Positions 45,434 to 58,311 of a stretch of 64,000 nt of DNA are shown one piece after another. The position numbers and the translations under genes are program-made. Every line of letters begins with the position of its first letter. Position 1 is the first letter of the stretch. The stretch comes from Heterodontus francisci (Eukaryota), in NCBI RefSeq assembly GCF_036365525.1, contig NC_090387.1:88763691-88827690 (forward strand). Direction: 5' to 3'. Below the pieces are notes generated by a model, which did not search any database, was not told the origin of the DNA, and was given only the letters and a program-made list of their open reading frames with translations.

Positions 45434-45482
45434 ATGACTGGAGCACTTTGGAGTATTTATTTCCTCGGAATTTTGTATCCAG
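45434..45482 (+). CDS. IgSF V-C1-TM-ITIM receptor, exon 1 (signal peptide)
   Basis: ATG ACT GGA... = MTGALWSIYFLGILYP then G|gtagct donor (phase 1). Hydrophobic leader; splices in frame to the V exon. Confidence 0.85.
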
Positions 45483-45734
45483 GTAGCTTGTTTATGTTTG
45501 TTGTACATTAACAGAACGTGACATCGATTTTCTAGTTAAAGTACAACGGAGCAATGTAATTTAGGGATAATTTGATGTAATATTACCACGTTTCTTGCCG
45601 GAGGGAAATATGTGTGAGAAAGCAAACGTTATTGAACATTACGTGGAGAATAATTGATAGTTTGGTAAATTGCATTACTATTCTACTAATGTGTTGCACG
45701 CACAGTATTATTTGGTGATTTCTTTCATTGATAG

Positions 45735-46046
45735 TTCCTGTGGACACCTCGGGCAAGGTGACTCCAGGCATGGCACAAATGAAGGCGCTCAGAGGTACAA
45801 ACATTACCTTGAAATGCCCTTTCCCCTTTCACTTGGACTATTCAAACGTAAAAGTTTACTGGTTGAGAAAGGAAAACGGTACCTTACTGCAAGAAGATAG
45901 CAGAACGTTGTTTCAGGTAAAGAAAGGTGGCGCCTACCTTCAGCTTCTGAATGTGACTATGCAGGATGCCGGAACTTATCAGTGTGGAGCCAAATATCAC
46001 GATCAAATGGTTGTAAAAGGAACTCTGGTGCAACTTGTTGTATATG
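45735..46046 (+). CDS. IgSF receptor exon 2, V-set Ig domain with germline-joined J-like G strand
   Basis: Acceptor ttcattgatag| and donor TAT G|gtaag (phase 1-1, 312 nt). NITLKC..VYW..LQLLNVTMQDAGTYQC..KGTLVQLVVY shows canonical V-set C, W and DxGxYxC. ORF 45728-46087. Confidence 0.93.
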
Positions 46047-46863
46047 GTAAGAGCCAGTGGAACAAGTATCTTGAGGAGTGTGGTTGATCTCGATGATAAT
46101 ATTGTGTTTCACAAGCAATTTCAATAGGGAAATGCCCTGCCTATAAAAAGTACGACTTTCTAATTGTTTATAGCGAAGCGTATTCCAAAATGTGGAACAG
46201 TTCCCATTTCCATAATCTTTGGAAAAAACTTACATCAGGCCAACATTATAAACGGTAGTTTGATTCTCAGTTTTTAGGGGAAATGATTTCAGATCTGGGA
46301 GCTAACTATTCTTTCCAATGTTGGCACGAAGTGTCAGGGTGAATAGTCTTGTGGCTATTTGCAATGTTATAAATGTTCAAAGACCTCTCTATGTATTATT
46401 ATGAAAAAGGGGAAAGTTCCAGTCCTATCATCTGGACAGCGCCATTACAGTTTCTGAGATCTAGATAAAATTCCTGAACCGTCGTTCATTTCTGTTCGGA
46501 AGCAAAACGTTTTCTCCATCTAACCACAGGACGCATGTCGTTCTATTGCTATAGCTTAAGCATGCCATGCATATACCTAACACGTTGATATTAATAAAAA
46601 AAGTTCATACATTTCTGAGTATAACTGTAATACAGCCATCCTGTTGTGGAGACAATTCTAAAAATCACGTCTCTGGGTCGAGTGAAGAATTATTAGATTT
46701 GGCTCCAGCAAGAATCAATAATAATTATTAACACAACTACGACGCCCAGACACATAAGCAGGGTTATTTTGGAAAACAGTGAGAGATAGAGTGCAAGTCA
46801 AATAAACTGCTTTATTTATTTATGCTTCCCCCCACCCCCCCCCCCCCCCCGCCCCCCATTTAG

Positions 46864-47169
46864 CTGCACCCACTCCCATGAATATTGTCTGCATGCCATC
46901 CGAACCGGCTTCGTCAATCTTTCTGAGACTTCAGTGCCGCACCGCTGCTTTTTACCCGAAGGAATTTAACCTCACCTGGCATAAAAATGGTACCGAAATT
47001 GTGGCAGGATTTAGAACTGAACAAAAGACAACAGAAGAGGGACTGTATAAAGCGATCAGCTCTTTAGACGAGACACAACCAATCGAGCACGGCACTGTTT
47101 ACACCTGCCACGTATATCACATTTCAAATTCAATTCCAGCGAATGCCAACTACACCGCTGTTAACAAAG
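46864..47169 (+). CDS. IgSF receptor exon 3, C1-set Ig domain
   Basis: C-rich acceptor atttag| and donor AAA G|gtact (phase 1-1, 306 nt). LQCRTAAFYPKEFNLTWHKNG...GLYKAISSL...YTCHVYH carries the C1 hallmarks FYP, W and YxCxVxH. ORF 46878-47219. Confidence 0.93.
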
Positions 47170-47831
47170 GTACTGTTATAGCACACGTGATACATTTATC
47201 GATTTTTATACAGTTATAAAGTTTCCATCTCACTTAATGGGTTAATGCAAACAAATGTGGGAAGTATTTCCTGTAGTTGTTTGCATATTACTCTGTCAAC
47301 TCCAAAGTCGCGCTTTAAAGCTTCCCTCATTGACTAAATGAATGTTTCCTTTCTGTTGGGTAGTACGATGTAATCGGAAATAAGTTGCAAACAACAAACC
47401 GAGCTGGTAGTGATCACATGAACTCAGCACAGTTTTCGCAACTAAATTAACAGTCATAATATTTGACGTTCACTCAGAAAGGACACGGTGAGGGTTGGCG
47501 CCCCAAAAAAAACTCAGTGCATTATTAAAGTCACCGAAATAGTTGCTGAAGACTGGAGAGGTGAAGCTGGTGGGGTGGGGTGGGGGAGGGGGTTGCTGTA
47601 ATGGATCCACGCATCATCAGTTGTCAGTGAGACTCTCTCGATACTGTATCAAATATTGAACCAGAATGACTTTAGTCTGTCTGTCTGGAAAGAAGGAGAT
47701 GCTTGCCTGAAGATTTATTCCGAAAGGCATCTGGAGAGAATTTGTAAACACCTGTCATTGTAATGTCTGTAAGGTCCCCCCCCCCCCCCCCCCCCATATA
47801 TTGATCAGAAAATACACCCAGACGTAATTTA

Positions 47832-55390: not shown

Positions 55391-55789
55391 TGTGTATTTA
55401 TATATATATGTGTGTGTGTGTGTGCGTGTGTGTATGTATATATTCAAATTATATATTCATTCAGTAAAGTTAAGACACGATTTGTCTGCTGTTATTTTTG
55501 TTTTAATGTAGTTTTCAAATCTATCTGAAACAACTCACCTGACATACTTACATTGCACGATTTGTTTTCGAGAAATAAGACACAAGCTTTGCACTTAAGT
55601 AAGTCACTTTCAAATTCAATATAACATTTTGTCTCATAATGTTCACTCTTCCCTGGAGGCCCTTTTACTACAAGGTTAATTAATATGTTTTCATTGGAAA
55701 ATACTACTTCGAAAATATCGTGTTCCGTAGTTGGTTCCTCGATATACTGACCCGGAAAAAAAGTTGAGTGCATTCCATGAACTCCTCAT

Positions 55790-56230
55790 CCATACATATA
55801 CACCAGAAGTTCGACACCATCCACGACGAAGAAACCTACTTGACTGACACCACCCTCCACCACCAGATCACTATGTCTGTAGTGTGTACTATCTACTAGA
55901 GGTACTGCAAAACATCACCAGGGCTCCTTCGATACAATTTTCATACTCACCATCTTCACCACCTAGAACAAAGATGGTACTTCGATGGGAACACCAACAC
56001 CTTCAAATTCCCATCCAAGTCAAGCACCATGGTGATGTATAAATATGTTGCTGTTCCTTCACTGTTGCTGCATCTAAATTCTGGCCGCTTCCCTTACAGC
56101 ACTGTGCATGCACCTACAGCACAAGGCCTGCTGCAATTCAAGAAAGTATCTCAAATCCACTTTCTCAAGGGTAATTAGGGATGGGCAATAAACTCTGACC
56201 TTTTGAGCGACAATCACATCCCAGGATGAT
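55790..56230 (+). mobile_element. 3' end of a second-family CR1-clade LINE
   Basis: Reverse complement of 24480-24920 (gggcaataaa.., gacaatcacatccca). Confidence 0.6.
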
Positions 56231-57453
56231 TTTTTTAAAATACAGAAGTTGCCCCACAAGGATGCTATAAATTCACTTTCAAATAGATTCGGCAATAAAA
56301 TCCAAGTAAAAGCGTGAGGCTGTGACACGTGCTCTCTAGTCAGCCATAAACATCCCAAAAATGTTTGCGATCAGATGTCAGTAAATGTGCAACGTCATGA
56401 TCAGTTTTATTCACTTCTCCGGCCTCAATGCACGTTTCCACGTGTGCGGCTCATTGCCTTGGAAATTACACAGTGTTTTTTTTTTGATACATTGAAGACA
56501 TTAATTGATTTTTTTTCTTTCTCCCTTCTCTTTCTTAATTGCATCTTTCATTCAATCTCTTTATTTCAATTCCTTTGCATGTTGTTGCAGCGAGTTCAAT
56601 ATTTTAATGTACCCATTCCTGGTTCAGAATCGGCATGTGCCATTAAGGATTTCCCAGTCTGTTTGGTTCAAGAGCTGCGGTGTTACTTTTCCTGTTCACG
56701 AATGCCAGCAATCACCTGTCTCGTATTCGTACTGAATACATCTCTAGCAATAATACATCTCGAGCTCAAAAGCCTCCGAAATGTGTGTGCTTACTGACTG
56801 GCGAGAAACGTTCATTTGCCAGTGACCACATAATCTGGGCCACGATGTTACGTCCTGTACAGCAAGCAGATTAAAGGGATCGAAATAGCTGGGATTCAGA
56901 GAGAGAGAGAGAGTTGGGGGTGGTGGGGGTGGAAGATAAAATAGAGTAAAAAGTAAACGTTAAAAAAAATCCAACATTGAATTTGAAATAATTCCGTAAT
57001 TTTATAAATGCATGTTTCAAGGCCAGAGAGGATGGGTAAAGTTATTCAAACTTATAACATCATTCCACAGCTGCACGGCTCAGCTCTAACAGTTTATGAT
57101 ATGTTTAGTTGGTATCCAGTGGTAAGTACCGCAACTTCACAGCAATCATGTTTTCGAATACCAGCTCTGTCCTGAAGTACCATGCTGATGGCGCTTTTGG
57201 AGGAGGAAGGTACATTGGTGGTAACTTCGTAATTTTCGCGTTAACGGCATGTGTGGAGACGTCAGAATTTGTGTTCCGATTTGTTATAATAACCGTGAGC
57301 GCTGAAGGGCTCACCATTATTTCTAATGCAATATTCTCACCCTCTACTTTAACGGTTTAAGTATCATATGGGAGATACTAAGTCATCAATTGCTGCACCC
57401 CAAACTAAGGATGAAACATGTGTTCCTTGATATACTTCCTTGTCTTTTTTCAG

Positions 57454-57468
57454 CCCGAAAAAAACAAC
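57454..57468 (+). CDS. Putative 15-nt cytoplasmic micro-exon (PEKNN)
   Basis: cttccttgtcttttttcag|CCCGAAAAAAACAAC|gtgaga; strong pyrimidine tract, frame-neutral, phase 0-0. Confidence 0.5.
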
Positions 57469-58182
57469 GTGAGATCAATTTGTTTTATTACTATTTATAA
57501 AGTAATTTCACATCAAATTCATGCTAGGGTCTTGAATATAAAGGGATGCTGTACTCCGCATTTATTACAACATGTTAATGAACCATAATGTCATTTATCT
57601 GACCACATATATTCCATTTGGTTGCGCTGACGCGTACAACATTTATTCCTGGAATGTTAGTTACATATCTACTCCAGTAATTGTCAACATGTAAATAATA
57701 AATCGTTGTTAATGAAAATGTTAGCATTTTCTAATCCATGGGAATTATCTATATTGCTTCCCTGTGAGCTGTTGTTTGCGGAAATAAAAAGGGAAATGTG
57801 TTAAGGCTCTACAGAATTGATAAGATGACGCGAATATGCTGCCTTAGTTATTGATCATATGTAAAGGCTTCTTGATTTTATTTAAATTCCAGGAATAGTA
57901 TCACAAAACATTTCAAATATTGACTTTCTAGAAAGAACAAGGGGCAGCTGACAATAACCTGACGTACGCGGCTCTGGATCTGATCGATAGCAAGAAAACT
58001 GTGAAACCAAAACAAAGGGAAGAGAGTACAGTATATGCGGAGGTACAGCTGAGTCTATGCGTGAAAACAATAATTATCTAAATCAGTATAAGTTTGGTTT
58101 TGAAATGATTCTGATATTTAATTTGAAGTAATTTCCATTTGAATTAATTTTAAGAAATATTAAAACAAGCATTGTTTTACAG

Positions 58183-58311
58183 ACCAAACATAGAGCCGCT
58201 GACAGCAAACTCACTTATGCTGCTTTGAGCATAAGTGATTCCAAAAAAGCGTCGAAACGGCAACAGGACGAAGCACGCCCAATATACGCTGTGGTGAATA
58301 CCAGCAGATAA
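58183..58311 (+). CDS. IgSF receptor terminal exon with ITIM (LTYAAL) and second Tyr motif (PIYAVV), copy 1
   Basis: attgttttacag|ACC... = TKHRAADSKLTYAALSISDSKKASKRQQDEARPIYAVVNTSR*; phase 0 fits the upstream exons. Confidence 0.8.
   Translation, partial: TKHRAADSKLTYAALSISDSKKASKRQQDEARPIYAVVNTSR

What the first reader, a model, noticed from the sequence alone, without database searches (positions are those of the whole stretch)
45434..58311. Non-rearranging antigen-receptor-like V-C1 inhibitory receptor with ITIM tail
Seen: phase-compatible exons give leader, V, C1, TM and cytoplasmic tail (about 317-327 aa). The V exon already contains its J-like G strand (KGTLVQLVV), and no RSS flanks it. 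The tail has LTYAAL (canonical ITIM) and PIYAVV with the tyrosines 23 residues apart. Known: V plus C1-set is largely confined to Ig/TCR, tapasin, SIRP, B7-H6 and germline-joined VJ-C1 genes proposed as antigen-receptor relatives, and paired Tyr motifs recruit SHP-1/2. Inference: a possibly uncharacterised cartilaginous-fish receptor with a TCR-like ectodomain but SIRP/NK-receptor-like inhibitory signalling. The ORF track shows only the two Ig exons.
Basis: partly seen in the sequence, partly recalled or inferred. Interest (0 to 1): 0.8.

Follow-up and report, generated by a model that had tools for sequence, protein, structure and literature searches.

The report
Horn shark SIRP-like inhibitory receptor gene
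This is a real horn-shark gene for a "brake"-type immune receptor with one variable and one constant antibody-like domain; public annotation already lists it under an automatic SIRP-alpha-like name, and it is one more member of a large shark, ray and chimaera family that this scan has met several times before.

Summary
Window 45434-58311 (+) carries a leader exon, a V-set exon and a C1-set exon (Pfam E about 1e-10 each), a membrane-anchor exon and tyrosine-motif tail exons. No RSS is present.

The gene is already modelled in RefSeq for Heterodontus francisci as XP_067906071 to XP_067906074, [quoted passage not shown]. Each exon I mapped translates to an exact substring of isoform X2 (444 aa).

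It also did not note that the A+B exon pair is tandemly duplicated (1018-bp period, five differences in the shared core). RefSeq reads through both copies to a last exon at 60328, giving four LTYAAL ITIMs.

The gene belongs to a sharply delimited family whose sampled members are all cartilaginous fish. The family has inhibitory forms and forms with an arginine in the membrane anchor, and its automatic names are inconsistent.

By sequence profile the ectodomain is about as close to Ig light chains as to SIRP-alpha. By predicted structure it fits B7-H6 best. The tail copies SIRP-alpha's tyrosine spacing. A specifically TCR-like ectodomain is not supported, and the J motif is degenerate in this gene.

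Earlier follow-ups of this scan found the same family on other DNA of this genome. I found no paper on it. Read-level transcript evidence could not be obtained.

The parts
44131..44188 (+). Alternative first coding exon of RefSeq isoforms X1 and X4 (MVCYAELIKSAGPLITINY); it does not look like a signal peptide
   Evidence: tblastn of P0170 residues 1-19, 100% identity; sequence and GT donor; isoform sequences
45434..45482 (+). Leader exon (MTGALWSIYFLGILYP plus 1 nt), phase-1 donor: the split leader typical of V genes
   Evidence: Exact substring of P0160 at residue 1, GT donor; sequence
45735..46046 (+). V-set exon with its G strand already in place (VKGTLVQLVVY), phase 1 at both ends, three N-glycosylation sites
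   Evidence: Pfam V-set E 9.8e-11; exact substring of P0160 at residue 18; no RSS
46864..47169 (+). C1-set exon with FYP in the BC loop, 13 residues between the B-strand Cys and the C-strand Trp, and YTCHVYH; it has an extra unpaired Cys (NIVCMP)
   Evidence: Pfam C1-set E 1.4e-10; exact substring of P0160 at residue 122; hallmark counts; criteria from PMC2785349
48767..48880 (+). Stalk and membrane-anchor exon (VIPTNQFSLIAGCAAGAVTIVMLTIMIVKRLQIITSK), phase 1 at both ends
   Evidence: Only strong hydrophobic stretch with splice sites between 47168 and 60500; exact substring of P0160 at residue 224; predicted helix 227-264
49419..49462 (+). Short juxtamembrane cytoplasmic exon (AKRNSLNPTQNEGR) that shifts the phase from 1 to 0
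   Evidence: Best splice-site candidate in a blind phase scan; exact substring of P0160 at residue 262; aligns with GKRTSLNTSQHADR of paralogue P0010
57932..58042 (+). Tail exon A1 (KEQGAADNNLTYAALDLIDSKKTVKPKQREESTVYAE): an ITIM plus the conserved TVYAET motif; phase 0 at both ends
   Evidence: tblastn of P0160 residues 276-314; sequence; P0160 sequence
58183..58311 (+). Tail exon B1 (TKHRAADSKLTYAALSISDSKKASKRQQDEARPIYAV...). RefSeq uses an internal donor after 58293. Read-through gives PIYAVVNTSR and a stop at 58309-58311, the ending that relatives use
   Evidence: Exact substring of P0160 at residues 313 and 387; sequence; relatives end ..VYAAVKNSN-stop
58950..59060 (+). Tail exon A2, the duplicate of A1
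   Evidence: tblastn; 1018-bp tandem repeat
59201..59329 (+). Tail exon B2, the duplicate of B1 (internal donor after 59311; read-through stop at 59327-59329)
   Evidence: sequence
60328..60393 (+). Last coding exon of all four RefSeq isoforms (YSSSKYIGHRRSALAHNRQGT-stop); not seen in relatives
   Evidence: Exact substring of P0160 at residue 424; strong polypyrimidine acceptor
57495..59537 (.). Two tandem copies of a 1018-bp unit, each holding one A and one B exon. Five substitutions in the shared core, none changing the protein
   Evidence: the repeat finder; blastn 99.1-99.3%; list of differences

Best explanation
This is an intact horn-shark gene for a type I membrane receptor. It has a signal peptide, one V-set domain with its last strand encoded in the germline, one true C1-set domain, a membrane anchor, and a cytoplasmic tail built from repeated ITIM-bearing exon pairs.

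The gene belongs to a large family of paired receptors found so far only in cartilaginous fish. Automatic annotation most often calls its members SIRP-alpha-like.

The most likely mechanism is inferred, not shown. The V domain binds a ligand on another cell or on a pathogen. Src-family kinases then phosphorylate the LTYAAL tyrosines and their partner tyrosines 23 residues downstream. The doubly phosphorylated pairs dock the tandem SH2 domains of SHP-1/SHP-2-type phosphatases, and these damp activating signals in the expressing cell.

Sister genes with nearly the same ectodomain, an arginine in the membrane anchor and a short tail would give the opposite, activating signal through an adaptor.

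In this gene a recent tandem duplication of the two tail exons doubles the motifs from four tyrosines (as in SIRP-alpha) to eight in the RefSeq product.
For: Domains: Pfam V-set and C1-set, E about 1e-10 each. The C1 hallmarks FYP, 13 residues from Cys to Trp, and xVxH are all present, using the criteria of PMC2785349.

Gene model: the splice sites are phase-consistent, and each exon is an exact substring of RefSeq XP_067906072.1 of Heterodontus francisci.

Family:
- 167 representatives at E<=1e-10 with the C1 exon alone.
- An ectodomain HMM gives at least 193 bits to about 80 family proteins and at most 76 bits to every other fetched protein that spans most of the model.
- All sampled names come from sharks, rays and chimaera.

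Tail:
- There are four LTYAAL motifs.
- Tyrosine spacing of 23-14-23 is conserved from chimaera to sharks, against 24-17-24 in SIRP-alpha.
- The local alignment to the SIRP-alpha tail has z 4.6; 1 in 2000 shuffles scored as high.

Similarity to SIRP-alpha: BLASTP of the whole protein against rodent SIRP-alpha gives E 3e-9. The family profile gives 58.9 + 40.8 bits to the human SIRP-alpha ectodomain.

Paired forms: relatives with a YRS...DH arginine anchor and a short tail are interspersed with ITIM forms in the tree. This gene sits in a 100/100-supported subfamily of 14 sequences from sharks and batoids.

Structure: the AlphaFold ectodomain has pLDDT mostly above 90, with two beta-sandwich domains and one membrane helix.
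Against: RefSeq XP_ models are computational.

No binding or signalling was tested.

In the RefSeq splice form only the four LTYAAL motifs fit the ITIM consensus. The partner motifs read TVYAET, PIYAVK and PIYAVY, which lack the usual I/V/L at +3.

SIRP orthology is not shown. There is one C1 domain where SIRP has two. Ig light chains score as high as SIRP-alpha. The predicted structure fits B7-H6 best. ITIM pairs with this spacing occur in many unrelated inhibitory receptors (my own knowledge), so the tail likeness could be convergent.

The tandem duplication could be an assembly error.
Confidence: 0.82

Rival explanations
1. The family is a B7-H6/B7-type molecule (V plus C domain). It would serve mainly as a cell-surface ligand for an NKp30-like or CD28-like receptor, and not as a SIRP-type signalling receptor.
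For: - The best structural superpositions of the predicted ectodomain are human B7-H6 (Z 17.1, rmsd 2.9 A, 179 residues, 26% identity), then ICOS-L and PD-L1.
- The best V-set hit of the V exon in the PDB is PD-L1.
- RefSeq names several family members 'natural cytotoxicity triggering receptor 3 ligand 1-like' or 'CD276 homolog'.
- The nearest named Atlas clusters include butyrophilin-, OX-2- and HHLA2-like sets.
Against: - The sequence profile ranks Ig light chains and SIRP-alpha above B7 proteins per V-C unit. B7-H6 is not among the 60 best PDB hits, and CD276 reaches 85.9 bits only with two V-C units.
- The C domain carries all three strict C1-set sequence hallmarks. PMC2785349 says CD80 d2 lacks them.
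- Repeated, conserved ITIM pairs and arginine-anchored twin genes mark paired signalling receptors, not B7 ligands.
- The rigid-body fit depends on a predicted interdomain angle.
Confidence: 0.1
2. The family is a surviving non-rearranging relative of the antigen-receptor precursor (UrIg/UrIg2- or PRARP-like). It would be closer to Ig/TCR chains than to SIRP, and informative about the gene the RAG transposon invaded.
For: - It has a V exon with a built-in G strand, a split leader and a true C1 domain.
- The family consensus G strand, GNGTGxxLxV, keeps the G-x-G-T core of J.
- Ig light chains are the best single V-C1 unit hits of the profile, at 61-62 bits.
- Some members are auto-named 'immunoglobulin lambda-1 light chain-like'.
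- UrIg2 is the top summed PDB hit of the C1 exon.
Against: - UrIg and UrIg2 have many C1 domains and no ITIM tail (PMC12227049).
- The best single UrIg2 domain scores only 45.6 bits with the profile and 17.7 bits with the C1 exon alone.
- This gene's own G strand has lost the G-x-G.
- SIRP-alpha scores as high as Ig light chains.
- No linkage to the MHC or to the antigen-receptor complex could be tested. Earlier scan notes, which I did not check, place MHC genes on other pieces of this genome.
Confidence: 0.12
3. The eight-tyrosine tail is an artefact. The 1018-bp tandem duplication would be an assembly error or collapsed haplotypes, or the RefSeq read-through of both copies is a modelling error, and the real product stops in exon B1 with four tyrosines.
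For: - The copies are about 99.5% identical in their core, and no protein change separates them.
- All relatives with complete tails end inside the B-type exon (..VYAAVKNSN-stop) and have one A and one B unit.
- The internal donor GTG|GTGAAT is only moderate, and the last exon has no counterpart in relatives.
Against: - The copies differ at five positions and share a clean junction.
- All four RefSeq isoforms carry both copies.
- The number of tail units varies naturally in the family; for example, the chimaera protein P0057 has three ITIM units.
Confidence: 0.25

Closest known systems
SIRP-alpha (PTPNS1/SHPS-1) and the SIRP paired-receptor family
   Same: - N-terminal V-set domain followed by a true C1-set domain, with no rearrangement.
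- A tail with two ITIM-type pairs. Tyrosine spacing is 23-14-23 against 24-17-24, and LTYAAL compares with LTYADL/ITYADL.
- Inhibitory and arginine- or lysine-anchored activating twins.
- BLASTP E 3e-9; family profile 58.9 + 40.8 bits.
- It is RefSeq's most frequent automatic name for the family.
   Different: - One C1 domain instead of two.
- The V domain is not specifically SIRP-like: SIRP is absent from the 60 best PDB hits of the V exon.
- The partner motif TVYAET lacks the +3 hydrophobic residue.
- In this gene the tail unit is doubled.
- Orthology, synteny and CD47 binding are untested.
B7-H6 (NCR3LG1) and other B7 family members (ICOS-L, PD-L1)
   Same: - Two-domain V-C ectodomain in an extended arrangement.
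- Best structural match: Z 17.1, rmsd 2.9 A, 26% identity.
- PD-L1 is the best V-set sequence hit of the V exon.
   Different: - B7 proteins are ligands, without repeated ITIM pairs or activating twins.
- The sequence profile scores them lower per V-C unit than Ig light chains or SIRP-alpha.
- The strict C1-set sequence hallmarks are met here.
UrIg / UrIg2 (non-rearranging shark antigen-receptor relatives; PMC12227049, PDB 9dmx)
   Same: - Germline V exon with its own G strand, and a split leader.
- C1-set domains.
- Restricted to cartilaginous fish.
- Top summed PDB hit of the C1 exon.
   Different: - UrIg2 has nine C1 domains, and no ITIM is mentioned in the paper.
- Its best single domain scores 45.6 bits with the profile.
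- It has a canonical VJ, whereas this gene's J motif is degenerate.
Ig light chains and TCR chains
   Same: V plus one C1 domain per chain, and a split leader. They give the highest single-unit profile scores, 61-62 bits.
   Different: - No RSS and no separate J segment.
- The gene has its own membrane anchor and an ITIM tail.
- The predicted elbow differs: rmsd is about 10 A on Fab light chains.

Membership tests
C1-set Ig domain (criteria of Hatherley et al. 2009, PMC2785349) | (F/Y)(F/Y/H)P at the start of the BC loop; exactly 13 residues between the B-strand Cys and the C-strand Trp; xVxH after the F-strand Cys | tested here: met
   FYP is present; Cys145 to Trp159 has 13 residues between them; C-HVYH is present. 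Pfam C1-set E 1.4e-10.
SIRP family | Ectodomain of one V-set and two C1-set domains | tested here: not met
   The gene and the RefSeq protein have only one C1 exon.
SIRP family | SIRP-alpha-type tail: four tyrosines in two ITIM-type pairs that bind SHP-1/2 | tested here: inconclusive
   The motif order and the 23-14-23 spacing match SIRP-alpha's 24-17-24, and the alignment has z 4.6. Binding was not tested, and such pairs also occur in other receptor families (my own knowledge).
SIRP family | Phylogenetic grouping with, and conserved synteny to, tetrapod SIRP genes | not tested
No curated reference set for Ig, TCR, B7, tapasin or MHC was available. SIRP-alpha and Ig light chains score alike.
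SIRP family | Paired inhibitory and activating members with near-identical ectodomains | tested here: met
   ITIM forms and arginine-anchored short-tail forms are interspersed in the tree, for example P0139/P0199 and P0009/P0111.
Rearranging antigen receptors (Ig/TCR) | V segment ending in an RSS, with separate J segment(s) | tested here: not met
   There is no heptamer-spacer-nonamer in the window and no heptamer near the V exon. The V exon holds its own G strand and has a GT donor.
VJ-type non-rearranging V domains (UrIg, NKp30, SIRP, CD8, CD79) | J-like G strand FGxGTxLxV with the G-x-G bulge | tested here: not met
   This gene has VKGTLVQLVV, with no G-x-G. The family consensus GNGTGxxLxV keeps G-x-G-T, so the motif was lost in this subfamily.
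UrIg / UrIg2 | VJ followed by several C1 domains; linked to the MHC or to the antigen-receptor complex | tested here: not met
   The gene has a single C1 domain and an ITIM tail. UrIg2 architecture is from PMC12227049. Linkage was not testable.
B7 family (B7-H6) | V-C ectodomain with the B7 fold, acting as ligand of a CD28/NKp30-type receptor | tested here: inconclusive
   The fold match is the best of all (Z 17.1), but sequence profile support is weaker than for Ig light chains or SIRP. Ligand function is not testable here.
ITIM-bearing inhibitory receptors | (S/I/V/L)xYxx(I/V/L) in the cytoplasmic tail | tested here: met
   LTYAAL occurs four times in the RefSeq product and twice if translation stops in exon B1.
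PRARP (chicken non-rearranging VJ genes, Fu et al. 2019) | Architecture and sequence of PRARPA/B | not tested
   The paper is not in the held library and no PRARP sequence was available. What I know of it is from memory only.

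The most novel reading that the evidence does not exclude
The cartilaginous-fish V-C1 paired-receptor family, of which this gene is a member, may be the closest living image of the pre-RAG 'one V, one C1' receptor from which both SIRPs and Ig/TCR chains descend. It is about equidistant in sequence from Ig light chains and SIRP-alpha, and it already has inhibitory and activating signalling. Within that picture, this gene shows tail growth by exon-pair duplication in progress.
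Probability: 0.12. Interest if true: 0.8.

Novelty: new member of a known kind. Interest (0 to 1): 0.4.

Why it matters
V plus true C1-set domains are almost confined to antigen receptors, MHC-related molecules, tapasin and SIRPs. A large, old family with that layout, paired inhibitory and activating forms, and membership so far only in cartilaginous fish bears on how antigen-receptor-like chains were used before or beside RAG-mediated rearrangement.

I found no paper on the family, and its automatic names are contradictory: SIRP-alpha-like, SIRP-beta-like, B7-H6-like, CD276 homolog, Ig lambda-like and tapasin-related-like. A proper description and name would therefore be useful.

This locus adds one member, already annotated in RefSeq, and one modest special feature: a very recent tandem duplication of the ITIM exon pair.

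Tried and rejected
- **Joining exons.** The window's exons were searched one by one. Full-length analyses used the RefSeq protein P0160 and its relatives as the tools returned them.
- **Sequencing runs.** The holders are Logan contigs of uncertain kind ('RNA?'). I do not count them as evidence of expression.
- **Profile word search.** It could not rank SIRP against B7 against Ig.
- **ESM Atlas.** The nearest clusters are generic V-C sets, which does not discriminate.
- **Pfam on ten other ORFs of the window.** Only reverse-transcriptase fragments matched. No neighbouring cellular gene was found.
- **Papers.** PMC3709836 (B7H6/NKp30 evolution) is not held, and the PRARP paper is not in the library. 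Searches for a description of the shark family found none. One search was malformed.
- **Rejected readings.**
  - UrIg/UrIg2 membership, because the gene has a single C1 domain and an ITIM tail.
  - A rearranging V gene, because there is no RSS.
  - A direct splice from the membrane-anchor exon to 58183, which runs into a stop codon almost at once.

Full report
**What is in the sequence**

Between 45.4 and 60.4 kb on the + strand there is a multi-exon gene.
- The two long open frames at 45728-46087 and 46878-47219 match Pfam V-set (E 9.8e-11) and C1-set (E 1.4e-10).
- A six-frame scan for the Cys...Trp...Tyr-x-Cys pattern finds no other Ig-like exon in the 64 kb.
- The V exon (45735-46046) follows a 49-nt leader exon (45434-45482, MTGALWSIYFLGILYP). 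It ends in a phase-1 GT donor after VKGTLVQLVVY, and the C1 exon (46864-47169) continues in phase.
- A hydrophobicity scan of the + strand from 47168 to 60500 gives one credible membrane anchor with splice sites, at 48767-48880.
- The tail exons are in phase 0 and the anchor exon ends in phase 1. I therefore scanned blindly for an exon that shifts the phase from 1 to 0. The best candidate by splice signals was 49419-49462 (AKRNSLNPTQNEGR).
- The tail has two exon types of 111 nt each. Exon A (57932-58042) reads KEQGAADNNLTYAAL...TVYAE. Exon B (58183 onward) reads TKHRAADSKLTYAAL...PIYAV, and by read-through it ends VNTSR-stop at 58309-58311.
- The A+B unit is tandemly duplicated with a 1018-bp period (57495-58519 and 58513-59537, 99.1-99.3% identity). 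Five substitutions lie in the shared core, and none changes the protein.

**The gene is already annotated**

A full HMMER search with the C1 exon alone found 167 representatives at E<=1e-10. Many are 250-450-residue proteins with a single C1 domain at about residues 124-221.

A word search with the closest full-length relative returned P0160 (XP_067906072.1), 'tyrosine-protein phosphatase non-receptor type substrate 1-like isoform X2 [Heterodontus francisci]', 444 aa.
- Translated one exon at a time, the leader, V, C1, anchor, 49419-49462, B1, B2 and 60328-60393 exons are exact substrings of P0160.
- My first A-exon coordinates in that script were four bases off. tblastn places A1 and A2 at 57932-58048 and 58950-59066, and the sequence read matches P0160.

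The window is therefore horn-shark DNA, and my hand-built model agrees with RefSeq.

RefSeq has four isoforms:
- X1 (447 aa) uses an alternative first exon at 44131-44188.
- X2 is the form described above.
- X3 (416 aa) starts at an internal Met.
- X4 (345 aa) skips the C1 exon.

All four use an internal donor in exon B (GTG|GTGAAT), run through both tandem copies, and end in an exon at 60328-60393. Relatives with complete tails instead stop inside the B-type exon (..VYAAVKNSN-stop) and have one A and one B unit. The four-tyrosine form ending at 58311 is thus the ancestral layout, and the eight-tyrosine form is specific to this gene, if it is real.

Full-length analyses used the RefSeq proteins as the tools returned them.

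**What I could not check**
- The runs that hold part of the locus are Logan contigs of uncertain kind. I do not count them.

**The family**
- An HMM of the V-C1 ectodomain gives at least 193 bits to about 80 fetched proteins. Every other fetched protein that spans most of the model gets at most 76 bits, so the family is sharply delimited.
- Every name I sampled is from a shark, ray, skate or chimaera: Heterodontus, Chiloscyllium, Stegostoma, Hemiscyllium, Heptranchias, Mustelus, Scyliorhinus, Rhincodon, Cetorhinus, Pristis, Hemitrygon, Mobula, Narcine, Leucoraja, Amblyraja and Callorhinchus.
- The automatic names are inconsistent: SIRP-alpha-like, SIRP-beta-1-like, NCR3LG1-like, CD276 homolog, Ig lambda-1 light chain-like, tapasin-related-like and uncharacterized.
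- Many members carry LTYAxL plus TEYAxL/I/V motifs. Others have an arginine in the anchor (..IYRSILGILVIIIL..DH) and a short tail.
- In a maximum-likelihood tree of 66 family ectodomains and three outgroup sequences, P0160 lies in a 100/100-supported subfamily of 14 sequences from sharks and batoids. The inhibitory and arginine-anchored forms are interspersed about as much as shuffled labels, with several near-identical inhibitory/activating pairs. That is the pattern of paired receptors. My tail classification in that script was crude; for example, P0007 has an arginine anchor but was scored as inhibitory.

**Which known family is closest**

The evidence is split.

By sequence:
- The C1 exon alone is a generic C1-set domain. 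Its best single-domain PDB hit is MHC class I alpha-3 (31.6 bits). IgNAR C and SIRP-alpha/gamma reach about 34 bits. UrIg2 is first only by summing three domains.
- The V exon alone hits I-set repeats by summation. Among V-sets its best hits are PD-L1 and pIgR, and SIRP is not in the top 60.
- A profile of 28 family members gives 62.4 and 61.4 bits to the V-C1 unit of two antibody light chains. It gives 58.9 bits to SIRP-alpha d1-d2 plus 40.8 to d3, and 45.6 to the best UrIg2 domain.
- BLASTP of P0160 against a rodent SIRP-alpha gives E 3e-9.

By structure:
- The AlphaFold model has pLDDT mostly above 90 across residues 28-222 and a disordered tail.
- Its best rigid superpositions are B7-H6 (Z 17.1, rmsd 2.9 A, 179 residues, 26% identity), then ICOS-L and PD-L1. 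Fab light chains reach Z 14.6 but with rmsd near 10 A, because the elbow differs.

By the strict C1-set criteria of Hatherley et al. (PMC2785349), the constant domain qualifies: it has FYP, exactly 13 residues between Cys145 and Trp159, and HVYH after the F-strand Cys.

By tail:
- Tyrosine spacing of 23-14-23 is conserved from chimaera to sharks and mirrors SIRP-alpha's 24-17-24.
- The A+B unit aligns to the SIRP-alpha tail with z 4.6 against 2000 shuffles.

My reading is that the receptor works like SIRP-alpha and the SIRP paired receptors. Membership in the SIRP family is not established. One defining feature, two C1 domains, is not met, and phylogeny and synteny remain untested.

**The antigen-receptor angle**
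- The gene does not rearrange. No heptamer-spacer-nonamer occurs in the window, and no heptamer occurs near the V exon.
This gene has VKGTLVQLVV without the G-x-G bulge, while the family consensus is GNGTGxxLxV.
- UrIg and UrIg2, the published non-rearranging shark relatives of antigen receptors, have a canonical VJ and many C1 domains, and no ITIM is mentioned for them (PMC12227049). PMC10751288 places VJ-C1 precursors in the proto-MHC.
- I could not test linkage. Earlier notes of this scan, which I did not check, put MHC genes on other pieces of this genome.

**Mechanism**

Shown here: the domain architecture, the motifs, their conservation, and the existence of arginine-anchored twins.

Inferred from established knowledge of ITIM receptors: phosphorylation of LTYAAL and of the partner tyrosine 23 residues downstream, docking of the tandem SH2 domains of SHP-1/2, and damping of activation.

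An open point is the partner motif. Within the family the internal one is a conserved TVYA(E/Q)TK, which lacks the +3 hydrophobic residue of ITIM and ITSM motifs. It may serve another SH2 protein.

**Relation to earlier work of this scan**

Before opening the notes I had recorded a 60% SIRP-like reading. Earlier follow-ups had already described the same family at several places on this chromosome and on other pieces, as 'shark SIRP-like V-C1 receptors' with inhibitory and activating forms and no paper found. My tests agree with them. This locus is one more member and not a new kind.

**Verdict**

The gene is a new member of a known kind. Interest is moderate: it attaches mainly to the unnamed family as a whole and, for this gene, to the recent duplication of the ITIM exon pair.

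Noticed in passing
window 24065-24430 (+): Possible decayed V-exon relic of the same family: ..FYCHLNDVTIQDCGTYKTGAK.. resembles LLNVTMQDAGTYQCGAKY, but the F-strand Cys is lost and stop codons lie nearby. The evidence is weak (tblastn E 0.01-0.03).
   Followed up: partly
window 57495-59537: The 1018-bp tandem duplication carrying tail exons A and B has only five differences in its core and looks very recent. Whether it is real or an assembly error is unresolved.
   Followed up: partly
window 46829-46857: A run of about 29 bases that is almost pure C lies directly upstream of the C1 exon acceptor. It is an unusually long polypyrimidine tract.
   Followed up: no
window 46864-47169 (P0160 residue 130): There is an extra unpaired cysteine at the start of the C1 domain (NIVCMP), where relatives have IVS. 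It could form an interchain disulfide. A conserved Cys also sits at the start of the membrane anchor (IAGCAAG).
   Followed up: no
window 44131-44188: The alternative first exon of RefSeq isoforms X1 and X4 encodes MVCYAELIKSAGPLITINY, which does not look like a signal peptide. These isoforms may not give a surface protein. Isoform X4 also skips the C1 exon.
   Followed up: partly
window 26421-26543 (+): This stretch matches the N-terminal extension of the paralogue model P0012 (49% over 41 aa, E 3e-8). It is probably a shared repeat that was pulled into that gene model.
   Followed up: no
window 17506-21291, 36900-43400, 54336-55293: These stretches hold retroelement remains: reverse-transcriptase ORFs (Pfam RVT_1) on both strands, including one inside the 8.5-kb intron before the tail exons, and the retrovirus-like stretch that another first-reader note places at 36924-43402.
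   Followed up: partly
family alignment A1 (relatives, not the window): The internal tail motif TVYA(E/Q)TK is conserved from chimaera to sharks but does not fit the ITIM or ITSM consensus at +3. Its binding partner is unexplained.
   Followed up: no
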